The notes under the pieces: model-generated
Database searches by the model: none
What the model saw: the letters and a program-made list of their open reading frames with translations, nothing else
Told to the model about the DNA's origin: nothing
DNA from: Octopus sinensis
Taxonomy: Eukaryota
Assembly (NCBI RefSeq): GCF_006345805.1
Contig: NC_043008.1
Location: 74,214,001-74,278,000, forward strand
Length of the DNA: 64,000 bases
Reading direction: 5' to 3'
Program-made: the position numbers and the translations under genes
In this document: piece by piece, positions 1,651 to 60,757 of the stretch
How the letters are laid out: each line of letters starts with the position of its first letter
Position numbering within the stretch: the first letter of the stretch is position 1

Positions 1651-1930
1651 CATCTCCCTGTCATTATAAGGGATAAAACTCATATGGAGACATGATGCAC
1701 CAATGGTGTGCTATATGTTGAATCATTGGGAAATGTATTTAACGCGATGGTACGGTACAAGTCTAATGTGAGCCTTAATCGAATAGACATCATCTCCCTG
1801 TCATTATAGGGGATAAAACTCATATGGAGACATGATGCACCAACGGTGTGCTATAGGTTGAATCATTGGGAAATGTATTTAACGCGATGGTACGGTACAA
1901 GTCTAATGTGAGCCTTAATCGAATAGACAT
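1651..1930. repeat. Tandem duplication, 2 x 140 bp
   Basis: catctccctgtcattata...gaatagacat at 1651-1790 and 1791-1930; 3 substitutions between copies. Confidence 0.92.
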
Positions 1931-7278: not shown

Positions 7279-8003
7279 GTCGTTTATATTCTGAGTTCAA
7301 ATCCCACCGTTATTAACGTTGTCTTTCATCCTTTCGGGATCGTTAAAATGAAATGCTAATCAGATTATGGAGTCGATATAGTCGACTAGACTTCTTCCTC
7401 TAAATTTCTGATTTTGTACCTCAATAATAAAAGGCAAATATCAAGTCAATCGATAGGCATATATAGTTATACATGAGTATGGCAGTTCGTTGGACAATAA
7501 TTATTTGTATAGTAGCTGTGGTCTCTTGAAGCTCGACTGTTCTCGCACATTGCACTCTTTCCAGAAGGAATGAATTGATTTGGGGAGAAAACGTGGAAAC
7601 CCATCGTATTCGAAGATGTGTATAATCTCCGATTTAGCACCTACCCCTCTCGTACATTCCTGGTATGGATGACTGCTTATTGTTTCCTTCTTCGTTGAAC
7701 TTGTCGCTTCAGATGAACCACTCCAACTAAACAGTGTCAACAAATTCAAATTAATTAATTAATTTTACCCTCAATTGTTGATATTATAATTCATTTCTCT
7801 CGGTCATACTGCCTCGGTTCTCGCGGTTAAAATATAATGTTTGCTAGATAGACCACGTGGGTGGAATGGGGAGTGCAGAATTTTACGCCTGCGCATTTTG
7901 AATTTGTTGACACTGTTTAGTTTGAGTGGTTCATCTGAAGCGACAAGTTCGCTGATAGGTAAAGTTCCTTCTTTTTAGTGTTTCCAAATCCAAATTAAGA
8001 AAT

Positions 8004-8066
8004 TTTGAGCTGACGAAAGAAATGCTGATTTTATTTGGCTAATCTTGAAACGTTGACGTACTCAAA
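8004..8066 (+). ncRNA. Type I hammerhead ribozyme
   Basis: UUUGAG-CUGACGA-AAGA[22 nt]UCUU-GAAA-C-GUUGAC-GUA^CUCAAA: 6-bp stem I, 4-bp stem II, intact core. Confidence 0.88.
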
Positions 8067-8566
8067 CGATCTATGTACTTGTGATATTTTTCTGTATTTA
8101 CCCCCAAACCTTCGTGAGCTGTCTAGAGTAAACATTATCTGAGAGAAATTTTCTTTAAGTAGTAGAAATGCTAAGAAAACTTTTTTTGGCTGCTATTTCT
8201 ACTAAGTTCAGTATGTGGCAAAGTAATTTATTTTATTAAGCCCTAATTATATAATGTAATATTTTGAATTCGCCTTAAATGGTCCTTTTACATACTGAGC
8301 ACTTGGTGAAATTGATTAATTAATTATTTTACCCTCAATTGTTGATATATAATTCATTTCTCTCGGTCATACTGCCTCGGTTCTCGCGGTTAAAATATAA
8401 TGTTTGCTAGATAGACCACGTGGGTGGAATGGGGAGTGCAGAATTTTACGCCTGCGCATTTTGAATTTGTTGACACTATTTAGTTTGAGTGGTTCATCTG
8501 AAGCGACAAGTTCGCTGATAGGTAAAGTTCCTTCTTTTTAGTGTTTCCAAATCCAAATTAAGAAAT

Positions 8567-8629
8567 TTTGAGCTGACGAAAGAAATGCTGATTTTATTTG
8601 GCTAATCTTGAAACGTTGACGTACTCAAA
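8567..8629 (+). ncRNA. Type I hammerhead ribozyme (second unit)
   Basis: Identical to 8004-8066. Confidence 0.88.
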
Positions 8630-8996
8630 CGATCTATGTACTTGTGATATTTTTCTGTATTTACCCCCAAACCTTCGTGAGCTGTCTAGAGTAAACATTA
8701 TCTGAGAGAAATTTTCTTTAAGTAGTAGAAATGCTAAGAAAATTTTTTTGGCTGCTATTTCTACTAAGTTCAGTATGTGGCAAAGTAATTTATTTTACTA
8801 AGCCCTAATTATATAATGTAATATTTTGAATTCGCCTTAAATGGTCCTTTTACATACTGAACACTTGGTGAAATTGATTAATTAATTAATTTTACCCTCA
8901 ATTGTTGATATATATATATATATATATAAATAGAAGGAAAAGAAAATTAAGATTGGGAAGTTAATCATTGTTTATTATTAACAGCATATTAATCAT

Positions 8997-12377: not shown

Positions 12378-14232
12378 AGATAGGCCCCCCTCCTCCAAAA
12401 AGATGGCTCCCTCACAGACAGTCCAACTATGATCAGTGAGATGCTGAATGACCAGTTCAAAAGTGTCTTTACCACCCCGTTGGAACACAGACAAGTGAAC
12501 GAACCAGTGGACTTCTTTGACGCCTCACCTATAACCAGCGAGGCGGTTACAATAGAATGTATCGACATTAGCGAAAAAGATATCCTACAAGCCATAAATG
12601 AAGTGGACACAAACTCAGCTGCTGGTCCAGACGGTTTCCCAGCCATCCTCCTCAAAGCATGTAAGCATGCCCTGGCAAAACCCCTCAAGATTCTCTTCCA
12701 GAGCTTTCTTGCGAATGGCAAACTGCCAAGCAAGCTGAAGGGGGGAATAATATGCCCAATACATAAAGGGGGAAGTAGAGCAGATGCCAAAAACAATAGG
12801 CCTATCTCTCTGACTTCACACATCAGCAAAGTCATGGAAAGGATAGTGAGAAAGAAACTAATCGCATTCCTTGAGGAAAATAACTTGCTGAGTAATACCC
12901 AGCATGGTTTTCGACCAGGTAGGAGCTGCCTGACCCAGCTCTTACAGCATTATGACTGGGTGTTGAGGCAGTTACTCAACAAATCAAATGTGGACGTAAT
13001 CTACTTTGATTTTGCAAAGGCTTTTGACAAGGTGGATCATGGTATGATATGCCACAAACTACGTGACCTCGGCATAGCTGGATACTTGGAGTGTGGTTGC
13101 ATGACTTCCTGAAAGATAGGAGTCAGGCAGTAGTGGTTAATGGAGCCACCTCTATGAACACACAAATAGTGAGCAGTGTTACACAGGGCACTGTCTTGGG
13201 ACCACTGCTTTTTATAGTGGCCCTCTCAGATATGCCCTCAAATGCCCGGATAGCCACTCTGGCCAGCTATGCAGACGATACGAAAGTCTCGCAGAAAATA
13301 CAAAACCCCAGCGATGTTGCACACCTGCAGCAGGAGTTGGACTCCATCTACAGATGGGCTGAGGATAATAATATGCAGTTTAATGCTGAAAAATTCCAGG
13401 CCCTGCGCTACCAGCATCCAAAACTGAATATTAAACTTACAGGATACACCGGTCTACAGGGAATTTCAATCCCAGAGCCTAAGTCTGTGAGGGACCTGGG
13501 TATCGACATGAGTGATGATACCTCTTTCCAAGTGCACATTACCAGGATGGCGACAAAGTGCAGACGACTGGCTGGGTGGATCCTAAGAACATTCAGAACC
13601 AGAGATAAGGAAACCATGATGGTCCTCTGGCGGACATTCGTCCTCAGTCGCCTGGATTACTGCTCACAGCTATGGTCACCCACCAGTGTAAAATTAACAG
13701 CGGACCTTGAAGCAATCCAGAGAAGATTCACAAAGAAGATCGTCTCTTTGCAACAGCTCAGCTACTGGGAAAGGTTGAAACAGCTAAGACTCTACTCCCT
13801 GGAGAGAAGACGGGAGAGGTATGCAGTAATATATGTCTGGAAGATCCTGGAAGGAATTGTGCCAAATTTTGGCAGTGTAAGCTACACCAATGCTAGAACG
13901 GGACGACACTGCATAGTGCCAAAGATCCCAGCAATGCCATCACGCTTCAGGACCAGCTTCTGCAACAGCCTGGGTTTCAAGGGCCCACAGCTTTTTAATA
14001 TTCTCCCAAAGAGTCTGAGGAACTTGCACAAAGTAGATGTAGCGGTTTTTCCTGTCAAGAGTCCCAGATGAACCTACCTCACGGCAAGAGGTGCAAATGA
14101 GAGTAGCTGTATCAAACTCCATTCTTCACCAAGTGCCACATATTAGACGAGGTTCGTCGTAATAACAGTGTAGTACAAAACGGCGGTGCATCAGCATGGC
14201 CGCAGCTCTGAGCTGAAACTAGAAAAAAAAAA
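12377..14232 (+). mobile_element. 5'-truncated CR1/L2-group LINE with reverse transcriptase, frameshifted near 13090
   Basis: ORFs 12429-13112 and 13091-14071: [64 protein letters not shown]. 3' stem-loop tail plus A-run; flanked by TA repeats. Confidence 0.93.
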
Positions 14233-26171: not shown

Positions 26172-26645
26172 TGGGAATGTGTGTCTCTCTGTCTGTATGT
26201 ATTTGTGCATCACTAAAACGCAAGTACTACACAACCGATTTCATTCACATTTTACACATGCACTGTCATAGGCCAAAAAATACTTTCAACTTCTTGCCTA
26301 ATGTGACCCGGGATCAATCTCTTATCTCTTACGCTGTTTCAGTATTACGGGTCAAAAGTGAAACAATAACATCGCTATCGAATGTGCGATACTTTCTGTT
26401 CAATGCTTACACTATTATCTCACATATATACATGCACACACGCACACACATATATATATATTATGGCCCAAAAACCTTTCAAATTCTTGCCTAATGTAAA
26501 CCAGGAGCAATCTCTGACTCTTACGCTATTTCAGTATTATGTGACAGAAATGAAACAATAACATCTCTATTGTAACGTGAGATACTTTCAGTTTAAGGCT
26601 TCCACTATTATCTTATATATATATATACATGTATGCGCACGCACG

Positions 26646-36258: not shown

Positions 36259-36309
36259 ATAAATAATATATAAATATATGCATATATGCATATATCTATG
36301 CATATACCT

Positions 36310-36325
<16 letters not shown>

Positions 36326-36341
<16 letters not shown>

Positions 36342-36511
36342 GCATACATGGGTACAGGACATAAAAAAAAGTTGAATAGAATGCGAAACGAAAACAAAAA
36401 CAAAAAAATAGAAACGAACTTTTCGAACAACGAAAAAACAGAGAAATGAGACATATAACATAAAGAATATACCCCTTCTTCAGTTGTCCCTGTTTCATCT
36501 TACTCCACGTT

Positions 36512-36556
<45 letters not shown>

Positions 36557-36755
36557 GCATACATGGGTACAGGACATAAAAAAAAGTTGAATAGAATGCG
36601 AAACGAAAACAAAAACAAAAAAATAGAAACGAACTTTTCGAACAACGAAAAAACAGAGAAATGAGACATATAACATAAAGAATATACCCCTTCTTCAGTT
36701 GTCCCTGTTTCATCTTACTCCACGTTTCGATATATATATATATATATATATATAT
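36326..36755. repeat. Tandem duplication, 2 x ~215 bp including (TA)n
   Basis: ggtacaggac at 36351 and 36566; copies read as identical. Confidence 0.88.
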
Positions 36756-36875
36756 AGAAAATAGTAAAAAGTGAAAAAACTACAGAAGGCTTGTTTTAAA
36801 AGGTTAAAAAATATATTTGAGTCATTATGTCAGAAGAATGTTATAAAATTTTTTCATACGGTGACATAGTTTTTG

Positions 36876-37034: not shown

Positions 37035-37616
37035 TTAATGGGGTGAGTTTCTCTGTATAAGAATGTTAGAGTGGTTAAGTTTGTGCTTATATTTTTCAAT
37101 GAAGAATGTTTCCTTGTTTAGTCTAATTTGTGTTGGTGTTCCAATAGCACATTGATAAAATGGAAAGATTAAAAATTGTGGTAGTAGTTGCATTGCGCAT
37201 TTCTCAATGTGCTCACTAAAGGGTATCATTCTGTATTCTGGGAATGCAATATGTTGTCGATGCAGTGTGCATCTACGTCTGAGTGATAGTCCCGTGGACC
37301 CCACGTAGTTTTGGTGGCAGCCCGAGCATCTTATGACATAAATTATGTTTTCAGAAGCGCAAGTAAAATTAGATTTGATCTTGAATTTTTGTCCCTCTTT
37401 GAAGAGGAATTCTGATCCTTCTAGAAGGTTTGGGCATGTTGTGCAGTTTGGTCTACCACATTTTTTTACTTTTGCATCCGTTATTTCAGAAAACAATTTT
37501 GCCTTTGTGAGAATATTTTTAAGTGATTTAGGTTGTTTGTAGCTTTTAATGATTTTATGTATGTTTAGAATTTCCTTTAATTTGGGGTCCTTATGAAGCA
37601 TTGGTAAATTACACAT
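37035..37616 (-). CDS. Penelope-like (Neptune-type) element C-terminus: Cys linker + GIY-YIG endonuclease, 5'-truncated; element spans ~36760-37620
   Basis: KCGRPNCTTC linker; NIIYVIRCSGCHQNYVGSTG..RRR..H; RLNKETFFIEKY..LN. Confidence 0.88.
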   Translation of the reverse strand: MCNLPMLHKDPKLKEILNIHKIIKSYKQPKSLKNILTKAKLFSEITDAKVKKCGRPNCTTCPNLLEGSEFLFKEGQKFKIKSNFTCASENIIYVIRCSGCHQNYVGSTGLSLRRRCTLHRQHIAFPEYRMIPFSEHIEKCAMQLLPQFLIFPFYQCAIGTPTQIRLNKETFFIEKYKHKLNHSNILIQRNSPH

Positions 37617-38860: not shown

Positions 38861-39922
38861 TGAGGATGAATAAAGGGGGGAGGGAGAGAGAGAGGTGGAG
38901 CGCAGTCACTAAGAGGAGGGGGCTGTGTTGAGTCCGTGTGGGGTATTGGTTTGTAGAGTGAAGATAAAACGTTGCTCCAAGTGGAGCCTGGATTGTGGAG
39001 GACCGTTGTGTGGGGCGAGACCAAACACAGAGATGTCATCGGGGATGTGGCTGGCCGAGTGGAAGTGACGTGCGACGGGAGAAAAGGACCGTAGACGATC
39101 ATCCCTTAGATGTTTGGCGAATCGGTCTGACAACCGGCGTCCCGTCTGTCCTATATACAGCATTCCGCAGAGGTTGCATTTAATGCAGTATATGAGGCCA
39201 GACGAAGTGCGCGTAAAAGAATGTCTGATACTTACAGTTCGCTGGTTGGAACCGGTGACAGCAGTGGTGTTGGTGATGAAGGGGCAGGTGTTGCAGCGGG
39301 ATCTAGAGCACGGGAATGATCCGTGTGGGGCTGAGGGGGAAGAAGAGAGGGTACTATGGACCAGGAGGTCGCGTAGATTCCGGGCTCGTTTGAATGAGGA
39401 CAGGGGTGGTTTGGGGAAAATGGGGCGGGTATTGGGATCGAGCTGGAGGCGACGGAAGGCACGTAGTATCTTCCGACGAAGGAGTAGAGTAGAGGGGTGG
39501 AAAAGGAGGGGAAAGGGGGTGCGGTTTGGGTTGGGTGGGATTTAGGAGAAAGGGCGGTGGTGCGGTCGATGCGACGAGCGCGGGCGAGGGCATTCAAGAT
39601 CAGTGTAGGTGGGTATCCTCGATGCCTGAACAGGCGGGCCAGGTATTGAGATTGGGTCTCGAAATCCTGGTCGCGGCTGAACAAGCGTCGAAGGCGGAGG
39701 AACTGGGAGTAGGGGATGGCCCGTTTGGTGTGGAAGGGGTGGGAGGAGGAGAAGTTGAGATAGAAGTGGGAATCCGTGGGTTTGAAGAAGGCGGAGGTGG
39801 TGAGAGAGTGAGAGGGGTGATCGATGCTGAGAGAGATATCAAGGAAGTTGACAGAGGTATTGGAGATGGTGGAAGTGAATTGTAGAGAGGGGTGGAAGTT
39901 GGAGAGGAAAGAGATGAAATGG

Positions 39923-41570: not shown

Positions 41571-42149
41571 CATATGTATGTATGCATATAGAGTGAGAGA
41601 GAGAGAGAGAGAGAGACTGAACGGATGAGATCGAAAGATACCCAATGTAGACATTCAAAGTCTTCGGGGTAAAGAGTAACTATAAGAGGAATCCAGGTGA
41701 GCAGATATAGAGATAACGATACAAATAATTTGCTAGACATGCAAAATATACACGCATATATACATATAAATAGAGAGACCCAAAGACCTAAGATATTCAG
41801 GGGATGAACATTTGTGTTTAATATATAGATATTTATATATTAAGAGAGCAGACGTACACAGTAAAAAGGCACAGAAAAATAAAGGGGAGACAGTATGGTA
41901 TTTCAAGTCCAACAAGCGTTTTGGGGGCCTTGGACTCACGTAATAATACTAGCAGATACAGTTCGCAAAAATTTGAGCGTAGGCAACCAATGGTGGATGC
42001 GACTAAGCATTAGGTAAATCCAGCCTCCATCTTCAGGATGTAGAGATTGATATGTATATTTTAAATATCTAGCCTGAGCAGTTTTATTCGTATATTTGTA
42101 TGATTAGCTCTCTCTCTCTCTTTTCTCTCTCTCTTTATATATGTATATA

Positions 42150-42845
42150 TATATAATTTCAACAATTGAGGGTAAAATTAATTAATTAATTAATCAATTT
42201 CACCAAGTATTCAGTATGCAAAGGGACCATTTAAGGCGAATTCAAATTATTACATTATATAAAAGGGCTTAGTAAAATAAATTACTTTGCCGCATACTGA
42301 ACTCGTTAGAAATAGCAGCTAAAAAAACTTTTTATAAAACTATTTCTAACACTTAAAGAAAACCTCTCTCATATAGTGTTTGCTCAATTCAACTCAAGGA
42401 AGTATGGGGGTAGAGACATTAAAAAATCAAATGCAAAGGTTATTTGAGTACGTACGTTTCAAGATTAGTCAAAATCGACCCTTCTCTCATCAGCTCAGAA
42501 TGCCCTTGTTTGAATCTGAAAACACTGAAAATGGGAGCATACAAGCCGAAAGGGTATGCTCCCATTTTCAGTGTTTTCAGATTCAAACAAGGGCATTCTG
42601 AGCTGATGAGAGAAGGGTCGATTTTGACTAATCTTGAAACGTACGTACTCAAATAACCTTTGCATTTGATTTTTTAATGTCTCTACCCCCATACTTCCTT
42701 GAGTTGAATTGAGCAAACACTATATGAGAGAGGTTTTCTTTAAGTGTTAGAAATAGTTTTATAAAAAGTTTTTTTAGCTGCTATTTCTAACGAGTTCAGT
42801 ATGCGGCAAAGTAATTTATTTTACTAAGCCCTTTTATATAATGTA
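42150..42845. mobile_element. HHR-bearing repeat related to the 563-bp family, with a perfect 292-bp palindrome, between (TA)n tracts
   Basis: Arms 42251-42542 and 42554-42845, 11-nt spacer; homologous to the reverse complement of ~7980-8340. Confidence 0.88.
42596..42653 (+). ncRNA. Type I hammerhead ribozyme (mirror copy on minus strand at 42443-42500)
   Basis: UUCUGAG-CUGAUGA-GAGA[18 nt]UCUU-GAAA-C-GUAC-GUA^CUCAAA; palindrome ACGUACGU. Confidence 0.86.
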
Positions 42846-42897
42846 TATATATATATATACATATATATACAAGCATACATACATACATATATATATA

Positions 42898-51964: not shown

Positions 51965-52152
51965 GTTTGCAGTCTTCTCATGCCGAATGCATCGATTCTC
52001 GCCCAATCACCGAAGTTAAGCATTGTCGAGCCTAATTAGTGCTTAGATGGTGGCTGTTTGGGAAAGCTAGGTGCTGCTAGCATCTCAACTTTTCTGGCAG
52101 CACCCCCAGCATGGCTACAACCTTTGGGCTGAAGCGCATAAAAGAATAAAAC
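51965..52152 (+). mobile_element. Decayed 5S rRNA-derived sequence (119 nt) fused to a LINE-type 3' tail; SINE3-like
   Basis: attctcgcccaatcaccgaagttaagc and ttagtgcttagatggtggctgtttgggaa..ggtgctg match 5S box A/IE/box C regions. 52096-52152 resembles the LINE tail. Confidence 0.75.
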
Positions 52153-52848: not shown

Positions 52849-53215
52849 TATACTTTTCTACCCAGATGTGAGTTTACGTACTTGTTTATATTTAAGCGTA
52901 TGTTATGAGATTATCACCTAGTAGATAGAATTATTAATTTCTAGTGTGTGAATATACACATGCACACATACACATGCACACACACATATTATAAATATAT
53001 GAATATACCGATATTGGTATGTTTACGACCCCGTAATTTAGCAGTTCTGCAATAGAGAACGATAGAACAACTACTAGGCTTACAAAGAATAAGTCTTGGG
53101 GTCAATTTGTTCGACTAAAGGTGGTGCTCTAGTATGGCTGCAGCCAATTGACTAAAACAAGTAAAAGAATAAAAGAATATAAATATATATATGTGTGTGT
53201 ACATACATACATACA

Positions 53216-53290
<75 letters not shown>

Positions 53291-53306
53291 CATAAATAAA
53301 TATATA

Positions 53307-53346
<40 letters not shown>

Positions 53347-53351
<5 letters not shown>

Positions 53352-56300
53352 CAATTAAGGAACGGCCATAATAGGCCATTCACCCACTAGAAATAACAGC
53401 CAAAGCTTCTACCGCAAATAAGATTAATTCCGTAAACAGGAGAAAATTAAAAAAACATTTTCCCTGTAATTTCTTGTACGGTATACCGTTTCATCCGCTG
53501 TTTAATGGTAAACTAACCTGATTAAATTAAATCAAGCCAATCTTCCATAAGCCCTCGATTCTTCAGCAAGAAATAGCTCAAGTCGGGACAGATATTACAA
53601 CGAGGCATACCCAATCTTGCCAAGGCAATATCTGACCTAAAATTTTCAAATCGTCGCACTCGCGCCAAATTTATCGGCAGCAAATAAATATCAGCCGTCG
53701 ATTCCATTACGGAATTAACCAAAAAATTCATAATTAATCAATATAGGGTGGCAAGGAAAATTTTGTAGAATTTTATTGCCACCAGCGGCCCAGTAGGAAA
53801 AAATTAAATAGTCATAGACCATTTTTAAGTTCAACATTAACAATTAAGGAACGGCCATAATAGGCCATTCACCCACTAGAAATAACAGCCAAAGCTTCTA
53901 CCGCAATAAAGATTAATTCCGTAAACAGGAGAAAATTAAAAAAACATTTACCCTGTAATTTCTTGTACGGTATACCGTTTCATCCGCTGTTTAATGGTAA
54001 ACTAACCTGATTAAATTAAATCAAGCCAATCTTCCATAAGCCCTCGGATTCTTCAGCAAGAAATAGCTCAAGTCGGGACAGATATTTACAACGAGGCATA
54101 CCCAATCTTGCCAAGGCAATATCTGACCTAAAATTTTCAAATCGTCGCACTCGCGCCAAATTTATCGGCAGCAAATAAATATCAGCCGTCGATTCCATTA
54201 CGGAATTAACCAAAAAATTCATAATTAATCAATATAGGGTGGCAAGGAAAATTTTGTAGAATTTTATTGCCACCAGCGGCCCAGTAGGAAAAAATTAAAT
54301 AGTCATAGACCATTTTTAAGTTCAACATTAACAATTAAGGAACGGCCATAATAGGCCATTCACCCACTAGAAATAACAGCCAAAGCTTCTACCGCAAATA
54401 AAGATTAATTCCGTAAACAGGAGAAAATTAAAAAAACATTTACCCTGTAATTTCTTGTACGGTATACCGTTTCATCCGCTGTTTAATGGTAAACTAACCT
54501 GATTAAATTAAATCAAGCCAATCTTCCATAAGCCCTCGGATTCTTCAGCAAGAAATAGCTCAAGTCGGGACAGATATTTACAACGAGGCATACCCAATCT
54601 TGCCAAGGCAATATCTGACCTAAAATTTTCAAATCGTCGCACTCGCGCCAAATTTATCGGCAGCAAATAAATATCAGCCGTCGATTCCATTACGGAATTA
54701 ACCAAAAAATTCATAATTAATCAATATAGGGTGGCAAGGAAAATTTTGTAGAATTTTATTGCCACCAGCGGCCCAGTAGGAAAAAATTAAATAGTCATAG
54801 ACCATTTTTAAGTTCAACATTAACAATTAAGGAACGGCCATAATAGGCCATTCACCACTAGAAATAACAGCCAAAGCTTCTACCGCAAATAAAGATTAAT
54901 TCCGTAAACAGGAGAAAATTAAAAAAACATTTTCCCTGTAATTTCTTGTACGGTATACCGTTTCATCCGCTGTTTAATGGTAAACTAACCTGATTAAATT
55001 AAATCAAGCCAATCTTCCATAAGCCCTCGGATTCTTCAGCAAGAAATAGCTCAAGTCGGGACAGATATTTACAACGAGGCATACCCAATCTTGCCAAGGC
55101 AATATCTGACCTAAAATTTTCAAATCGTCGCACTCGCGCCAAATTTATCGGCAGCAAATAAATATCAGCCGTCGATTCCATTACGGAATTAACCAAAAAA
55201 TTCATAATTAATCAATATAGGGTGGCAAGGAAAATTTTGTAGAATTTTATTGCCACCAGCGGCCCAGTAGGAAAAAATTAAATAGTCATAGACCATTTTT
55301 AAGTTCAACATTAACAATTAAGGAACGGCCATAATAGGCCATTCACCCACTAGAAATAACAGCCAAAGCTTCTACCGCAAATAAAGATTAATTCCGTAAA
55401 CAGGAGAAAATAAAAAAACATTTACCCTGTAATTTCTTGTACGGTATACCGTTTCATCCGCTGTTTAATGGTAAACTAACCTGATTAAATTAAATCAAGC
55501 CAATCTTCCATAAGCCCTCGGATTCTTCAGCAAGAAATAGCTCAAGTCGGGACAGATATTTACAACGAGGCATACCCAATCTTGCCAAGGCAATATCTGA
55601 CCTAAAATTTTCAAATCGTCGCACTCGCGCCAAATTTATCGGCAGCAATAAATATCAGCCGTCGATTCCATTACGGAATTAACCAAAAAATTCATAATTA
55701 ATCAATATAGGGTGGCAAGGAAAATTTTGTAGAATTTTATTGCCACCAGCGGCCCAGTAGGAAAAAATTAAATAGTCATAGACCATTTTTAAGTTCAACA
55801 TTAACAATTAAGGAACGGCCATAATAGGCCATTCACCCACTAGAAATAACAGCCAAAGCTTCTACCGCAAATAAAGATTAATTCCGTAAACAGGAGAAAA
55901 TTAAAAAAACATTTACCCTGTAATTTCTTGTACGGTATACCGTTTCATCCGCTGTTTAATGGTAAACTAACCTGATTAAATTAAATCAAGCCAATCTTCC
56001 ATAAGCCCTCGGATTCTTCAGCAAGAAATAGCTCAAGTCGGGACAGATATTTACAACGAGGCATACCCAATCTTGCCAAGGCAATATCTGACCTAAAATT
56101 TTCAAATCGTCGCACTCGCGCCAAATTATCGGCAGCAAATAAATATCAGCCGTCGATTCCATTACGGAATTAACCAAAAAATTCATAATTAATCAATATA
56201 GGGTGGCAAGGAAAATTTTGTAGAATTTTATTGCCACCAGCGGCCCAGTAGGAAAAAATTAAATAGTCATAGACCATTTTTAAGTTCAACATTAACAATT

Positions 56301-59300
56301 AAGGAACGGCCATAATAGGCCATTCACCCACTAGAAATAACAGCCAAAGCTTCTACCGCAAATAAAGATTAATTCCGTAAACAGGAGAAAATTAAAAAAA
56401 CATTTACCCTGTAATTTCTTGTACGGTATACCGTTTCATCCGCTGTTTAATGGTAAACTAACCTGATTAAATTAAATCAAGCCAATCTTCCATAAGCCCT
56501 CGGATTCTTCAGCAAGAAATAGCTCAAGTCGGGACAGATATTTACAACGAGGCATACCCAATCTTGCCAAGGCAATATCTGACCTAAAATTTTCAAATCG
56601 TCGCACTCGCGCCAAATTTATCGGCAGCAAATAAATATCAGCCGTCGATTCCATTACGGAATTAACCAAAAAATTCATAATTAATCAATATAGGGTGGCA
56701 AGGAAAATTTTGTAGAATTTTATTGCCACCAGCGGCCCAGTAGGAAAAAATTAAATAGTCATAGACCATTTTTAAGTTCAACATTAACAATTAAGGAACG
56801 GCCATAATAGGCCATTCACCCACTAGAAATAACAGCCAAGCTTCTACCGCAAATAAGATTAATTCCGTAAACAGGAGAAAATTAAAAAAACAGGAGAAAA
56901 TTAAAAAATGTTTTTTTAATTTTCTCCTGTTTACGGAATTAATCTTTATTTGCGGTAGAAGCTTTGGCTGTTATTTCTAGTGGGTGAATGGCCTATTATG
57001 GCCGTTCCTTAATTGTTAATGTTGAACTTAAAAATGGTCTATGACTATTTAATTTTTTCCTACTGGGCCGCTGGTGGCAATAAAATTCTACAAAATTTTC
57101 CTTGCCACCCTATATTGATTAATTATGAATTTTTTGGTTAATTCCGTAATGGAATCGACGGCTGATATTTATTTGCTGCCGATAAATTTGGCGCGAGTGC
57201 GACGATTTGAAAATTTTAGGTCAGATATTGCCTTGGCAAGATTGGGTATGCCTCGTTGTAAATATCTGTCCCGACTTGAGCTATTTCTTGCTGAAGAATC
57301 CGAGGGCTTATGGAAGATTGGCTTGATTTAATTTAATCAGGTTAGTTTACCATTAAACAGCGGATGAAACGGTATACCGTACAAGAAATTACAGGGTAAA
57401 TGTTTTTTTAATTTTCTCCTGTTTACGGAATTAATCTTTATTTGCGGTAGAAGCTTTGGCTGTTATTTCTAGTGGGTGAATGGCCTATTATGGCCGTTCC
57501 TTAATTGTTAATGTTGAACTTAAAAATGGTCTATGACTATTTAATTTTTTCCTACTGGGCCGCTGGTGCAATAAAATTCTACAAAATTTTCCTTGCCACC
57601 CTATATTGATTAATTATGAATTTTTTGGTTAATTCCGTAATGGAATCGACGGCTGATATTTATTTGCTGCCGATAAATTTGGCGCGAGTGCGACGATTTG
57701 AAAATTTTAGGTCAGATATTGCCTTGGCAAGATTGGGTATGCCTCGTTGTAAATATCTGTCCCGACTTGAGCTATTTCTTGCTGAAGAATCCGAGGGCTT
57801 ATGGAAGATTGGCTTGATTTAATTTAATCAGGTTAGTTTACCATTAAACAGCGGATGAAACGGTATACCGTACAAGAAATTACAGGGTAAATGTTTTTTT
57901 TAATTTTCTCCTGTTTACGGAATTAATCTTATTTGCGGTAGAAGCTTTGGCTGTTATTTCTAGTGGGTGAATGGCCTATTATGGCCGTTCCTTAATTGTT
58001 AATGTTGAACTTAAAAATGGTCTATGACTATTTATTTTTTCCTACTGGGCCGCTGGTGGCAATAAAATTCTACAAAATTTTCCTTGCCACCCTATATTGA
58101 TTAATTATGAATTTTTTGGTTAATTCCGTAATGGAATCGACGGCTGATATTTATTTGCTGCCGATAAATTTGGCGCGAGTGCGACGATTTGAAAATTTTA
58201 GGTCAGATATTGCCTTGGCAAGATTGGGTATGCCTCGTTGTAAATATCTGTCCCGACTTGAGCTATTTCTTGCTGAAGAATCCGAGGGCTTATGGAAGAT
58301 TGGCTTGATTTAATTTAATCAGGTTAGTTTACCATTAAACAGCGGATGAAACGGTATACCGTACAAGAAATTACAGGGTAAATGTTTTTTTAATTTTCTC
58401 CTGTTTACGGAATTAATCTTTATTTGCGGTAGAAGCTTTGGCTGTTATTTCTAGTGGGTGAATGGCCTATTATGGCCGTTCCTTAATTGTTAATGTTGAA
58501 CTTAAAAATGGTCTATGACTATTTAATTTTTTCCTACTGGGCCGCTGGTGGCAATAAAATTCTACAAAATTTTCCTTGCCACCCTATATTGATTAATTAT
58601 GAATTTTTTGGTTAATTCCGTAATGGAATCGACGGCTGATATTTATTTGCTGCCGATAAATTTGGCGCGAGTGCGACGATTTGAAAATTTTAGGTCAGAT
58701 ATTGCCTTGGCAAGATTGGGTATGCCTCGTTGTAAATATCTGTCCCGACTTGAGCTATTTCTTGCTGAAGAATCCGAGGGCTTATGGAAGATTGGCTTGA
58801 TTTAATTTAATCAGGTTAGTTTACCATTAAACAGCGGATGATGAAACGGTATACCGTACAAGAAATTACAGGGTAAATGTTTTTTTAATTTTCTCCTGTT
58901 TACGGAATTAATCTTTATTTGCGGTAGAAGCTTTGGCTGTTATTTCTAGTGGGTGAATGGCCTATTATGGCCGTTCCTTAATTGTTAATGTTGAACTTAA
59001 AAATGGTCTATGACTATTTAATTTTTTCCTACTGGGCCGCTGGTGGCAATAAAATTCTACAAAATTTTCCTTGCCACCCTATATTGATTAATTATGAATT
59101 TTTTGGTTAATTCCGTAATGGAATCGACGGCTGATATTTATTTGCTGCCGATAAATTTGGCGCGAGTGCGACGATTTGAAAATTTTAGGTCAGATATTGC
59201 CTTGGCAAGATTGGGTATGCCTCGTTGTAAATATCTGTCCGACTTGAGCTATTTCTTGCTGAAGAATCCGAGGGCTTATGGAAGATTGGCTTGATTTAAT

Positions 59301-59586
59301 TTAATCAGGTTAGTTTACCATTAAACAGCGGATGAAACGGTATACCGTACAAGAAATTACAGGGTAAATGTTTTTTTAATTTTCTCCTGTTTACGGAATT
59401 AATCTTTATTTGCGGTAGAAGCTTTGGCTGTTATTTCTAGTGGGTGAATGGCCTATTATGGCCGTTCCTTAATTGTTAATGTTGAACTTAAAAATGGTCT
59501 ATGACTATTTAATTTTTTCCTACTGGGCCGCTGGTGGCAATAAAATTCTACAAAATTTTCCTTGCCACCCTATATTGATTAATTAT
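53347..59586. mobile_element. Retrozyme-like tandem array: ~12.6 copies of a 491-492 bp HHR unit in two divergent arms
   Basis: Left arm 53347-56892 (HHR sense on minus, 7 HHRs); right arm 56909-59586 (sense on plus, 5 HHRs); (TA)n at both outer ends; copies differ almost only by short indels. Confidence 0.92.
57283..57389 (+). ncRNA. Type I hammerhead ribozyme, representative of the 12 in the array; predicted cleavage after 57381
   Basis: AUUUCUUG-CUGAAGA-AUCCG[58 nt]CGGAU-GAAA-C-GGUAUACC-GUA^CAAGAAAU: perfect 8-bp stem I, 5-bp stem II, palindromic ACGGUAUACCGU stem III. Confidence 0.94.
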
Positions 59587-59597
59587 ATATATATATA

Positions 59598-59757
59598 TGT
59601 ATTATTTTCTCTGTTTATTTCTCTGTTCCTTTCTGTCGAAGAAGAGCGTAGACTCGAAACGTAAAAGACTTTCTCACTTCCCGAGTGTTAAACTAATACA
59701 TATTTTTATTGTTTACACAACCGTCTTCGTCCATTTTTTTTTGTAAATACTCACTAT
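59598..59757 (+). mobile_element. Short pLTR-like repeat with a non-canonical minimal hammerhead-like motif
   Basis: CUUU-CUGUCGA-AGAAGAGC-GUA-GACUC-GAAAC-GUA^AAAG at ~59630-59668; core differs at A6 and stem III is only the ACGU palindrome. Confidence 0.4.
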
Positions 59758-59999
59758 ATACCTGTGTGTGTGTGTGTATGCTTACATACGCATACACACC
59801 TATATAAGTAATATGAGAGGTTTAGTTCACTGATGATCTGAACCAATAGGTATGTTGCGTCGGTCTCTTTCACTAAGTTAGGCGAGGTAAACAAACCGAC
59901 ACCTGTTGTCAAGCTATGGCAGGAAACAAACAAACACACATACAAACACACACACGCACACACACATACGCACACTCACACACACACATATATATGTGT

Positions 60000-60757
60000 G
60001 TATATACGCTAATGTTTCTCTTTATATTCAGTTATAGTAAAAACAATTTTATATTCATTTGATGGGTTGCTCTATACATTTATAGAGTATAAATTCATCC
60101 TTCTTAAACAAGCATATTATTGGTACTGGCTTCGAAGTTTCAGCCGCAAAAGCCATCGTCGGACTTCGGTGCATTGAAGTTAATATTGACTCTAAATAGT
60201 TTTTACCGAGTTAAAATCTTCCTTCAGTGTGTGGGTTTGAATGTTGTTGTAATTAAATCTTAGGACTGGAGTTCATGGAAAGGTATTTTGGAAGCGTGTA
60301 GAACTTTGTACGCAGGAGCAAATATTTGGTTGTATCCCTTTCTTGGTATGTAGGTAGGCAGGCAGGTAGGTAGGTAGGTATAGGATGTGTCAATAGTTTT
60401 CCTGTATTTAGCTTTATTGGATTTAATCCTTTGCTATGGGAATGTAAAATTCAATGGTTCAAATTTAGTCCAGTATTTAAAGAAAACTAATAATTGAGTA
60501 TTACTATATGGGTAACATAATCAAACTTTTTAGAGGTTCGTAAAAGAATATACGTTGGTGGTATGATTTAGTTGGTCTGTTTCTTTACTTTTCTTTGTTA
60601 TTTAGAGTATTTCTTATTTGCAAGGTGTGGGTTATTATTCCGACATGTCACTATGTTAATAGCATAGAAATGAGTTTATCCTGTACTTTGATGTTCACAA
60701 TTGGGAAAATGTAAAAGTGGTGGGTCTTCATGTTTCTCTCATACAGACTAACAACCA
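60000..60757 (-). mobile_element. Heavily decayed Penelope-like 3' end (GIY-YIG second half + pLTR with decayed HHR at ~60121-60170)
   Basis: CMRET*RP..FSQL (YIGET.RP-like), KYWT..HSKGLN; CCGACGA-UGGC..GGCU-GAAAC-UUCGAA-GCC with palindromic loop. Confidence 0.5.

What the first reader, a model, noticed from the sequence alone, without database searches (positions are those of the whole stretch)
53347..59586. 6.2-kb array of a 492-bp unit, each encoding a hammerhead ribozyme: candidate cephalopod retrozyme/circRNA system
Seen: a 491-492 bp unit, no TE ORF, (TA)n at both ends. Each unit has a type I HHR with intact CUGAAGA/GAAA core, 8/8-bp stem I (AUUUCUUG/CAAGAAAU), 5/5-bp stem II around a 58-nt insert, a 12-nt palindromic stem III and a GUA site; 10 of 12 copies are perfect. 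Copies differ almost only by 1-nt homopolymer indels, one 3-nt insertion and one A/T variant, so the array is very young or collapsed. Established: non-LTR retrozymes in other metazoans are non-coding tandem repeats with one type I HHR per unit; their transcripts self-cleave into monomers that circularise, and Penelope-like RTs are the proposed mobilisers. Inference: read-through transcription should release ~492-nt monomers that can be ligated into circles. I do not know of this family being described, but cannot verify that.
Basis: partly seen in the sequence, partly recalled or inferred. Interest (0 to 1): 0.95.

Follow-up and report, generated by a model that had tools for sequence, protein, structure and literature searches.

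The report
Hammerhead-ribozyme tandem repeat, inverted twin array
A non-coding 492-bp repeat that carries one complete self-cleaving hammerhead ribozyme motif per unit sits in a (TA)n microsatellite as two head-to-head arrays; it looks like a new member of the known animal "retrozyme" class, not a new kind of element.

Summary
The repeat and the ribozyme motif are real, but this is not one 6.2-kb array. It is two arrays in opposite orientation: 53347-56892 (7.2 units, motif on the minus strand) and 56906-59586 (5.4 units, motif on the plus strand). Their 5' ends meet at a near-palindromic junction at about 56.9 kb, and their 3' ends abut (TA)n.

All 12 units carry a type I hammerhead: 8-bp helix I, CUGAAGA, 5-bp helix II with a 58-nt rod extension, GAAA, a 4-bp palindromic helix III and a GUA site. 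Ten copies are identical.

- The minimum-energy fold of the 107-nt motif is exactly the hammerhead junction (z -5.2).
- Rfam Hammerhead_1 aligns over its full length but scores only 21.4 bits (gathering score 34).
- No shuffle of the window (0 of 3000) gave a motif this good.

Unit length, 36% GC, lack of an ORF and Penelope-like element (PLE) remnants in the same window all fit metazoan non-LTR retrozymes, already known in mussels, corals and amphibians. The inverted/tandem layout in (TA)n matches published PLE insertion hallmarks.

Cleavage, transcription and circles are untested, and I found no homologues of the unit. A cephalopod (octopod) origin is only weakly supported. Verdict: new member of a known kind, moderate interest.

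The parts
53177..53348 (.). Left flank: 172-bp (TA)n/(TG)n microsatellite that abuts the 3' end of the left arm
   Evidence: TRF, period 2, 87 copies; sequence
53347..56892 (-). Left arm: 7.2 units of the 492-bp repeat, with the ribozyme (sense) strand on the minus strand. The 3' end of the arm is at unit position 130 (..TTGTTAAT|ATAT..)
   Evidence: TRF; unit splitting and alignment
53469..53574 (-). Hammerhead copy with a 1-nt deletion in helix II (AUCGA instead of AUCCG)
53958..54064 (-). Hammerhead copy, identical 107-mer
54450..54556 (-). Hammerhead copy, identical 107-mer
54941..55047 (-). Hammerhead copy, identical 107-mer
55432..55538 (-). Hammerhead copy, identical 107-mer
55923..56029 (-). 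Hammerhead copy, identical 107-mer
56414..56520 (-). Hammerhead copy, identical 107-mer
56869..56908 (.). Head-to-head junction. Both arms break at unit position about 20, in the A7/T7 tract 16-22 nt 3' of the predicted cleavage site. There is a 19-nt slippage duplication (AAACAGGAGAAAATTAAAA x2.1) and a near-spacerless palindrome centre
   Evidence: TRF; sequence; inverted repeat with 100% complementary arms 56403-56839 / 56964-57400
56906..59586 (+). Right arm: 5.4 units, with the ribozyme strand on the plus strand. The 3' end of the arm is at unit position 237 (..GATTAATTAT|ATAT..)
   Evidence: TRF
57283..57389 (+). Hammerhead copy, identical 107-mer. Predicted cleavage between 57381 and 57382. 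Rfam Hammerhead_1 scores 21.4 bits at 57285-57387
57774..57880 (+). Hammerhead copy, identical 107-mer. Predicted cleavage 57872|57873. Rfam Hammerhead_1 scores 21.4 bits
58265..58371 (+). Hammerhead copy, identical 107-mer. Predicted cleavage 58363|58364
58757..58866 (+). Hammerhead copy with a 3-nt GAT insertion just 5' of GAAA; only 3 bp of helix II remain adjacent to the core
59251..59357 (+). Hammerhead copy, identical 107-mer. Predicted cleavage 59349|59350
59585..59598 (.). Right flank: short (TA)7 run that abuts the 3' end of the right arm
   Evidence: sequence

Best explanation
The locus is one insertion, inside a (TA)n microsatellite, of a non-autonomous and non-coding retroelement of the metazoan non-LTR retrozyme class. 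The genome is probably that of an octopod cephalopod. The unit is 492 bp with 36% GC, and it carries one complete type I hammerhead ribozyme.

Shown here: the anatomy, the motif, its fold, its improbability by chance, and the PLE-style layout of the insertion.

Inferred, in order:
1. Sense transcripts covering more than one unit fold the hammerhead as they are made. This can happen as a monomer, since helix III is a stable 4-bp stem with a tetraloop. It can also happen as a double hammerhead through the self-complementary 12-nt helix III.
2. They cut after GUA every 492 nt.
3. [quoted passage not shown] In these circles helix I is no longer formed.
4. A Penelope-like element (PLE) reverse transcriptase/GIY-YIG endonuclease nicks (TA)n and copies the circular or multimeric RNA by target-primed, rolling-circle reverse transcription. 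That gives several near-identical units in a single event.
5. The head-to-head second arm arises the same way as the inverted 5'-truncated copies that typify PLE insertions.

Because of the inversion, only transcripts running outward from the junction give ribozyme-bearing RNA. Transcripts that cross the junction would instead form a long hairpin.
For: Motif and fold:
- All 12 copies have the C3-A9, G12-A14, A15.1-U16.1 and H17 positions in place, with helices of 8, 5 and 4 bp.
- The minimum-energy fold of 57283-57389 is exactly the three-way junction, -35.3 kcal/mol, z -5.2.
- The opposite strand folds to only -22.6 kcal/mol. Five of the 14 pairs in the helix II extension are G-U, so that helix exists only in the ribozyme-bearing strand.
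- Rfam Hammerhead_1 aligns to all 45 model positions with the same architecture. It is the only ribozyme family matched on either strand of a whole unit.

Chance:
- 0 of 3000 shuffles reach helices of 8/5/4 bp, and 0.002 per window reach 17 stem pairs in total.

Dimer:
- Cofolding two copies gives -83.6 against 2 x -35.3 kcal/mol, through a 12-bp intermolecular helix III.

Circle:
- The sense circular fold is -142.4 kcal/mol (z -5.4), against -98.9 (z -3.5) for the antisense.

Class features:
- Tandem non-coding unit, 36% GC, no ORF, matching PMC7229834 and the 51-972 bp range in bioRxiv 10.64898/2026.07.22.740005.

Mobiliser context:
- Two PLE C-terminal remnants with GIY-YIG domains lie at about 38990-39750(-) and 37035-37616(-).
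- A second hammerhead-bearing repeat family lies at 7750-8914 and 42251-42845.

Insertion footprint:
- The 3' ends of both arms abut (TA)n with 3-4 nt of A/T microhomology, and the 5' ends meet head to head.
- PMC8557442 describes partial tandems, an adjacent inverted 5'-truncated copy and a microsatellite/(TA)n target bias as PLE hallmarks.
- The other two hammerhead loci in the window also carry an inverted segment at their 5' side, and the one at 42 kb is flanked by TA-rich repeats.

Age:
- The copies have no shared variants. The pattern is star-like, as expected from one recent event.
Against: - Below Rfam's gathering score (21.4 against 34 bits), and invisible in whole-window and 7-kb searches.
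- The 10.1-11.1 pair is A-U, whereas G-C is described as highly conserved in canonical hammerheads (PMC4209133). This may lower activity.
- Helix I (8 bp) and helix II (5 bp plus a rod) differ from the canonical 6/4-bp metazoan design, and I could not identify any loop-loop contact.
- In contexts of 270-980 nt the minimum-energy fold does not keep helix I. Enforcing the ribozyme costs 3.7-7.7 kcal/mol.
- There is no independent evidence of selection. All copies are near-identical, so no covariation can be seen, and no homologue of the unit was found.
- There are no expression data.
- The sense strand has one T7 and two T6 runs per unit (consensus). These would stop RNA polymerase III, so multimeric transcripts would need another polymerase.
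- The unit shows no detectable similarity to the only pLTR-like family available for comparison (local score 29, shuffle maximum 32).
- The variation profile (private homopolymer deletions) looks like long-read consensus error. Copy number and the inversion itself could therefore be affected by assembly.
Confidence: 0.7

Rival explanations
1. These are tandem solo pseudo-LTRs of an autonomous Penelope-like element (PLE), not a separate non-autonomous family. On this reading the 492-bp unit is the terminal repeat of a PLE whose ORF lies elsewhere in the genome, amplified here as partial tandems.
For: PLE insertions form partial tandems and inverted 5'-truncated copies, and they favour microsatellites (PMC8557442). 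Vertebrate retrozymes group with PLE pLTRs (bioRxiv 10.64898/2026.07.22.740005). PLE remnants are present in the window.
Against: There is no RT/EN ORF within or next to the array, and the nearest PLE remnant is 14 kb away. Twelve units without any ORF is retrozyme-like. The hammerhead has a stable 4-bp helix III, unlike the minimal PLE-type motifs (PMC4209133). There is no similarity to the pLTR-like family in the window. The distinction is partly semantic if retrozymes derive from pLTRs.
Confidence: 0.15
2. This is an inert satellite or a dead relic. The hammerhead sequence is intact only because the array is very young or collapsed, and the locus is not transcribed and yields no monomer or circular RNA.
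For: There is no expression evidence. Identical copies give no sign of purifying selection. The 10.1-11.1 pair is non-canonical and the Rfam score is sub-threshold. The longer-context minimum-energy fold lacks helix I.
Against: The G-U-rich helix II exists only on the ribozyme strand, and the sense RNA is strongly structured. Both point to constraint at the RNA level. Retrozyme repeats tested in a coral, a mussel and the axolotl were all expressed as linear and circular RNA (PMC7229834).
Confidence: 0.15
3. The inversion, the copy number, or both are assembly artefacts. A fold-back chimeric long read or a mis-join in a collapsed satellite could have created the palindromic junction, and the true locus is a single-orientation array.
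For: The copies differ almost only by private 1-nt homopolymer deletions, which is typical of noisy long-read consensus. The junction is a near-perfect palindrome with both arms breaking at the same unit position.
Against: The arms have different lengths (7.2 against 5.4 units), end at different unit positions (130 and 237), and run into different, non-mirrored flanks. The window has no gap (no N). The two other hammerhead loci in the window show the same kind of inverted segment, and such structures are a documented PLE feature (PMC8557442).
Confidence: 0.2
4. The locus works mainly as a source of hairpin RNA. Transcription across the junction gives a near-perfect double-stranded RNA of about 2.7 kb that feeds siRNA or piRNA pathways against the repeat family, and the ribozyme is incidental.
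For: The head-to-head arms are about 99% complementary over more than 2.6 kb. Any transcript entering from either flank must cross the junction.
Against: This is pure inference, with no small-RNA data. The structure is equally explained as a by-product of integration.
Confidence: 0.1
5. The hammerhead-like motif occurs by chance in an ordinary AT-rich satellite.
For: The Rfam score is below threshold, and its E-value scaled to the whole window would be about 1.6.
Against: 0 of 3000 shuffled windows give helices of 8/5/4 bp. The minimum-energy fold equals the ribozyme fold. The window holds two further independent hammerhead loci, against 0.1 expected. The context (tandem repeat, PLE-rich region) is the known one.
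Confidence: 0.01

Closest known systems
Metazoan non-LTR retrozymes (Cervera & de la Pena 2020, PMC7229834), in particular the Mytilus galloprovincialis retrozyme of about 350-390 bp
   Same: Non-coding tandem repeat with low GC. One type I hammerhead per unit. No LTR, PBS, PPT or ORF. It co-occurs with PLEs. Helix III is stable, as in the invertebrate retrozymes that cleave as monomers (PMC7761336). The sense RNA is predicted to be highly self-paired.
   Different: The unit (492 bp) is above the 150-450 bp range first reported, although within the 51-972 bp range of the 2026 preprint. Helix II carries a 58-nt rod-like extension. Helix I is 8 bp. The 10.1-11.1 pair is A-U. The locus is a head-to-head pair of arrays. 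Expression and circles have not been shown.
[quoted passage not shown]
   Same: Type I topology and a palindromic helix III that allows a dimeric ribozyme. Association with complex tandem/inverted insertions and with microsatellite targets (PMC8557442).
   Different: PLE motifs lack helix III or have only 1-2 bp, and they flank an RT-EN ORF. Here helix III is 4 bp plus a tetraloop, and no ORF is attached. The window's other family (8004, 8567, 42445, 42599) is the one that looks like this class.
Newt satellite 2 and axolotl retrozymes
   Same: Tandem satellite-like repeats with a type I hammerhead, and a possible double-hammerhead mode through a self-complementary helix III.
   Different: The amphibian motifs have a weak helix III and need the dimer (PMC7229834). 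Here the monomer fold is already stable.
Plant LTR retrozymes (PMC4918200)
   Same: Non-autonomous retroelements whose transcripts are cut by hammerheads and circularised.
   Different: The plant elements have type III hammerheads, LTRs, a PBS and PPT, GC above 55% and Gypsy-type mobilisers. None of these is present here.

Membership tests
Hammerhead ribozyme, type I | Catalytic core C3 U4 G5 A6 N7 G8 A9 / G12 A13 A14 / A15.1-U16.1 / H17 | tested here: met
   CUGAAGA ... GAA-A...U-A is present in all 12 copies. Every core column of RF00163 is matched.
Hammerhead ribozyme, type I | Three helices around the core, with helix I open and helices II and III closed | tested here: met
   Helices of 8, 5 and 4 bp. 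The minimum-energy fold equals this junction, z -5.2.
Hammerhead ribozyme, type I | Score at or above the Rfam RF00163 gathering threshold (34 bits) | tested here: not met
   21.4 bits, and only in short-stretch searches. Absent. The alignment places the 58-nt helix II extension as an insertion.
Hammerhead ribozyme, type I | G10.1-C11.1 pair typical of canonical motifs | tested here: not met
   A10.1-U11.1 in every copy. The pair is described as highly conserved in PMC4209133.
Hammerhead ribozyme, type I | Tertiary contact between loop 1 and loop 2 | tested here: inconclusive
   Helix II has an AG/AG internal loop 5 bp from the core. Helix I is followed by unpaired flanks. No recognisable conserved contact nucleotides, and no 3D test.
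Hammerhead ribozyme, type I | Helices supported by covariation among homologues | not testable with these tools
   The copies are near-identical. No homologue was found through the ORF, the protein search or DNA patterns. No eukaryotic genome collection is available.
Hammerhead ribozyme, type I | Site-specific self-cleavage | not testable with these tools
   Needs in vitro transcription.
Metazoan non-LTR retrozyme | Short non-coding tandem repeat, from dimers to multimers | tested here: met
   7.2 + 5.4 units of 492 bp. No ORF above 68 aa, and none with homologues.
Metazoan non-LTR retrozyme | One type I hammerhead per unit, in the same orientation along the array | tested here: met
   Met within each arm. 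The two arms are in opposite orientation.
Metazoan non-LTR retrozyme | Low GC (below 45-50%) | tested here: met
   0.35-0.37 across the array.
Metazoan non-LTR retrozyme | Co-occurrence with PLEs in the same genome | tested here: met
   GIY-YIG/PLE C-terminal remnants at about 38990-39750(-) and 37035-37616(-).
Metazoan non-LTR retrozyme | Sequence relatedness to a PLE pseudo-LTR | tested here: inconclusive
   No significant similarity to the only pLTR-like family in the window. Other PLE families of the genome could not be searched.
Metazoan non-LTR retrozyme | Expressed as linear and circular monomer RNA | not testable with these tools
   No transcriptome access.
PLE pseudo-LTR minimal hammerhead | Helix III absent or 1-2 bp, and the motif located in repeats flanking an RT-EN ORF | tested here: not met
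   Helix III is 4 bp plus a UAUA loop. No ORF is adjacent.
Plant LTR retrozyme | Type III hammerheads within LTRs, with PBS and PPT | tested here: not met
   Type I topology, and no LTR structure.

The most novel reading that the evidence does not exclude
The twin head-to-head array inside a (TA)n tract is the scar of a single integration event. In that event a Penelope-like reverse transcriptase/GIY-YIG endonuclease copied a circular retrozyme RNA by rolling-circle, target-primed reverse transcription from the nicked microsatellite. If so, the locus would be a direct structural footprint tying the mobilisation of non-LTR retrozymes to PLE machinery. The reviews say the repeats themselves carry no motif that reveals the mobiliser (PMC7761336).
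Probability: 0.35. Interest if true: 0.6.

Novelty: new member of a known kind. Interest (0 to 1): 0.4.

Why it matters
If it is active, this would extend ribozyme-made circular RNAs (retrozymes) to cephalopods. I found no paper in the held library that reports retrozymes or hammerhead repeats in that group.

It would also add a hammerhead variant with an unusually long helix II and an A-U pair at 10.1-11.1.

The more useful point is anatomical. Near-identical units, a (TA)n target and a head-to-head inverted arm are exactly the published hallmarks of PLE insertions. Loci like this could therefore be used genome-wide to test whether PLEs are the mobilisers of animal retrozymes. That question has so far been argued only from co-occurrence and from pLTR similarity in vertebrates.

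It does not open a new category.

Tried and rejected
- Rfam at the gathering score on the whole window found only a 5S-like hit. Rfam at E<=10 on 53000-60000 found only microsatellite and hairpin 'miRNA' noise. The hammerhead surfaced only in 151-nt and 541-nt searches.
- I looked for homologues of the unit through its 68-aa spurious ORF. The exact look-up and the homology search both found nothing.
- DNA pattern scans of metagenome and viral contigs, with the 3' half of the ribozyme and with a gapped core pattern, gave 0 hits. No eukaryotic genome collection is available, so family distribution and covariation could not be tested.
- Organism identification by exact ORF look-ups found nothing. 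The PLE endonuclease query gave only unnamed hits of 49% identity or less. The LINE reverse transcriptase gave one named hit, Argonauta hians at 60%. That is only a hint.
- Homology between the 492-bp unit and the second hammerhead family was rejected. The local score is 29, against a shuffle mean of 22 and a maximum of 32; the only shared stretch is 17 nt.
- I checked for a second ribozyme on the antisense strand, as in a viroid-like two-polarity design. Neither my descriptor nor Rfam found one on a full unit.
- I checked for mirrored variants between the arms, which would show a DNA-level fold-back duplication of an older array. There are none, and all variants are private.
- Literature searches for cephalopod, octopus or squid hammerhead or retrozyme reports found none. 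Cephalopods are mentioned only for Naiad PLEs.

Full report
**Observation**

Tandem Repeats Finder reports two arrays between 53347 and 59586, not one. The first is 53347-56892 (period 491, 7.2 copies, 99% matches). The second is 56906-59586 (period 491, 5.4 copies, 99% matches). Their consensus units are reverse complements of each other.

Five are on the plus strand (57283-59357) and seven on the minus strand (53469-56520). Ten are the same 107-mer. The copy at 53469-53574(-) lacks one C of helix II, and the copy at 58757-58866(+) has a GAT insertion just before GAAA.

The arms are 100% complementary over 437 nt on each side of the junction, and GC skew changes sign there. The description as "a 6.2-kb array" misses a head-to-head inversion at about 56.9 kb.

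**Is the hammerhead real?**

Read on the sense strand, the motif is AUUUCUUG / CUGAAGA / AUCCG-[58 nt]-CGGAU / GAA / ACGG-UAUA-CCGU / A / CAAGAAAU. Every invariant core position is present, and the topology is type I.

- RNAfold gives exactly this three-way junction as the minimum-energy and centroid structure: -35.3 kcal/mol, z -5.2, no shuffle as good.
- The 58-nt insert folds into an irregular rod that extends helix II.
- Five of the 14 pairs of the rod's terminal stem are G-U. The complementary strand therefore cannot form it and folds to only -22.6 kcal/mol. This argues that the ribozyme-bearing RNA strand is the constrained one.
- Rfam is less clear. There is nothing at the gathering score on the whole window and nothing at E<=10 on 7 kb.
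- When a short stretch is searched, Hammerhead_1 (RF00163) aligns over all 45 model positions with the same architecture. It scores 21.4 bits against a gathering score of 34, with E = 0.0038 on 151 nt and 0.014 on 541 nt. In that alignment the 58-nt helix II extension sits as an insertion, which I take to be the main reason for the low score.
- It is the only ribozyme family matched on either strand of a full unit.
- My own descriptor scan gives 0.10 loose hits per shuffled window and 0.0023 with helices of at least 6/4/3 bp. None of 3000 shuffles reached 8/5/4 bp.

Chance is therefore not a serious explanation.

There are real departures from the canonical metazoan design, which has a 6-bp helix I, a 4-bp helix II, a 1-2-bp helix III and a G10.1-C11.1 pair (PMC4209133). 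Here helix I is 8 bp, helix II is very long, helix III is a stable 4-bp stem with a tetraloop, and the 10.1-11.1 pair is A-U. In contexts of 270-980 nt the global minimum-energy fold does not keep helix I, but enforcing the ribozyme costs only 3.7-7.7 kcal/mol. That is compatible with folding during transcription. Two copies cofold into a double hammerhead through a 12-bp helix III: -83.6 kcal/mol against 2 x -35.3.

**The unit and its copies**

Cutting at the predicted sites gives a 492-nt consensus monomer.

- The differences among copies are 14 private 1-nt deletions in short homopolymer runs, one T insertion, the GAT insertion and one substitution.
- No variant is shared in a way that would define subgroups, and none is mirrored between the arms.
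- This is what one very recent amplification event would give. It is also what residual long-read consensus error on identical copies would give.
- GC content is 0.36.
- No ORF of 90 aa or more overlaps the array. The longest ORF per unit is 68 aa and has no homologue.
- As a circle, the sense RNA folds to -142.4 kcal/mol (z -5.4, 59% paired). Helices II and III are kept and helix I is lost. The antisense circle folds to -98.9 kcal/mol (z -3.5).
- The sense strand carries one T7 and two T6 runs per unit (consensus). RNA polymerase III would therefore not make multimers.

**Anatomy of the insertion**

In sense orientation, both arms have their 5' ends at the junction and their 3' ends at the outside.

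- The left arm ends at unit position 130 (..TTGTTAAT|ATATAT..). The right arm ends at position 237 (..GATTAATTAT|ATATAT..). Each runs into (TA)n with 3-4 nt of A/T microhomology.
- The 172-bp (TA)n/(TG)n tract on the left and the (TA)7 on the right read as one microsatellite split by the insertion.
- At the junction both arms break at unit position about 20, in the A7/T7 tract 16-22 nt downstream of the cleavage site. There is a 19-nt slippage duplication there.
- Craig et al. (PMC8557442) describe PLE insertions as highly 5'-truncated and organised in partial tandems. [quoted passage not shown] They also name microsatellite bias, with (TA)n for Naiads, and tandem/inverted structures as PLE-specific features of target-primed reverse transcription.

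The locus fits that description point by point. I infer that it was made by PLE machinery acting in trans on a multimeric or circular RNA template, which is the model proposed for retrozymes (PMC7229834, PMC7761336). I could not resolve whether the second arm came from priming on both sides of the break or from a template switch onto the nascent strand. The symmetric break point favours a fold-back type of switch.

**Context in the window**

The descriptor scan also finds a second, unrelated hammerhead family.

- One locus is a 563-bp repeat present as 2.07 tandem units at 7750-8914, with an inverted 54-nt piece at 7697-7750.
- The other is a perfect palindrome, with arms 42251-42542 and 42554-42845 and an 11-nt spacer, next to TA-rich repeats.
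- The two loci are 77-80% identical.
- Their hammerheads keep the whole core. They differ at N7, at 10.1 (A-U against G-U) and in the loops. That pattern suggests constraint.
- They have the short palindromic helix III of PLE-type motifs, and Rfam does not detect them at all.
- The 492-bp unit has no significant similarity to this family.
- Two PLE C-terminal remnants (RT end, linker and GIY-YIG) lie at about 38990-39750(-) and 37035-37616(-). Their homologues carry PF26215 (HTH_animal) and GIY-YIG.
- All three hammerhead loci in the window thus show an inverted segment at their 5' side. This argues that the inversion in the big array is biological and not an assembly error, although only raw reads can settle that.

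**Organism**

Exact look-ups of window ORFs found nothing. The frameshifted LINE reverse transcriptase at 12429-14071 has as its best named relative a protein of the octopod Argonauta hians, at 60% identity. The remaining hits with comparable coverage fall below 50%. This supports a cephalopod, probably octopod-related, source, but weakly.

**Comparison with what is known**

The locus meets the sequence-level definition of a metazoan non-LTR retrozyme. It is a non-coding tandem repeat with one type I hammerhead per unit and low GC. It has no LTR, PBS or PPT, and it co-occurs with PLEs (PMC7229834, PMC7761336). Consensus lengths of 51-972 bp are reported in bioRxiv 10.64898/2026.07.22.740005.

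The class has been shown experimentally in a coral, a mussel and the axolotl. A mollusc retrozyme is therefore not new in kind. I found no paper in the held library that reports retrozymes or hammerhead repeats in cephalopods. Repbase and Dfam could not be consulted.

The locus is not a PLE minimal hammerhead, because helix III is stable and no ORF is attached. It is not a plant LTR retrozyme either.

**Verdict**

This is a real, well-formed hammerhead repeat and a new member of a known kind. Its activity is untested. Only outward transcription from the junction region yields ribozyme RNA, and transcription across the junction would yield a hairpin of about 2.7 kb.

The most interesting aspect is the PLE-like integration footprint, which could be tested genome-wide. 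Interest is moderate (0.4). My confidence that this is a retrozyme-class element is about 0.7. My confidence that it currently produces circles is nearer 0.5.

Noticed in passing
window 7697-8914 (hammerhead-like motifs at 8004-8066 and 8567-8629, plus strand): A second, unrelated hammerhead-bearing repeat. A 563-bp unit is present as 2.07 tandem copies (98.8% identical), with an inverted 54-nt piece of the same unit abutting its 5' end. The motif is UUUGAG/CUGACGA/AAGA..UCUU/GAAA/ACGUUGACGU/A/CUCAAA. Rfam does not detect it.
   Followed up: partly
window 42119-42850 (arms 42251-42542 / 42554-42845; motifs at 42445-42497(-) and 42599-42651(+)): A perfect 292-nt inverted repeat with an 11-nt spacer, 77-80% identical to the 563-bp family. 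It carries two hammerhead-like motifs on opposite strands about 100 nt apart and is flanked by TA-rich microsatellites. The core is conserved against the 8-kb copies, with changes only at N7, at 10.1 and in the loops.
   Followed up: partly
window about 38990-39750(-) and 37035-37616(-): Two 5'-truncated remnants of Penelope-like elements, each with the end of the reverse transcriptase, a linker with a Cys motif, and a GIY-YIG endonuclease. They are embedded in (TATG)n/(TG)n microsatellites. The closest database proteins are 49% identical or less and carry PF26215 and PF01541.
   Followed up: partly
window 12429-14071(+): A frameshifted LINE-type reverse transcriptase (RVT_1 split over two ORFs). 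The best named relative is a hypothetical protein of the octopod Argonauta hians at 60% identity. This is the only clue to the source organism.
   Followed up: partly
window 51965-52082(+): A 5S rRNA-like sequence (52.9 bits, gathering score 38, full-length model) followed by a short T run, 1.3 kb upstream of the array. It is single-copy in the window. The score is not far above the gathering score, so this may be a pseudogene or a 5S-derived SINE head and not a working gene.
   Followed up: no
window 57403-57409, 57546-57551 and 57624-57629 (and the same positions in every unit): The ribozyme-bearing strand has one T7 and two T6 runs per unit. These would act as RNA polymerase III terminators and argue against Pol III making multimeric precursors.
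   Followed up: no
window 1651-1930, 26271-26623, 36302-36756: Other short tandem duplications: 140 bp x2, 193 bp x1.8 and 215 bp x2.1. None has a hammerhead-like motif in my scan. I did not examine them further.
   Followed up: no
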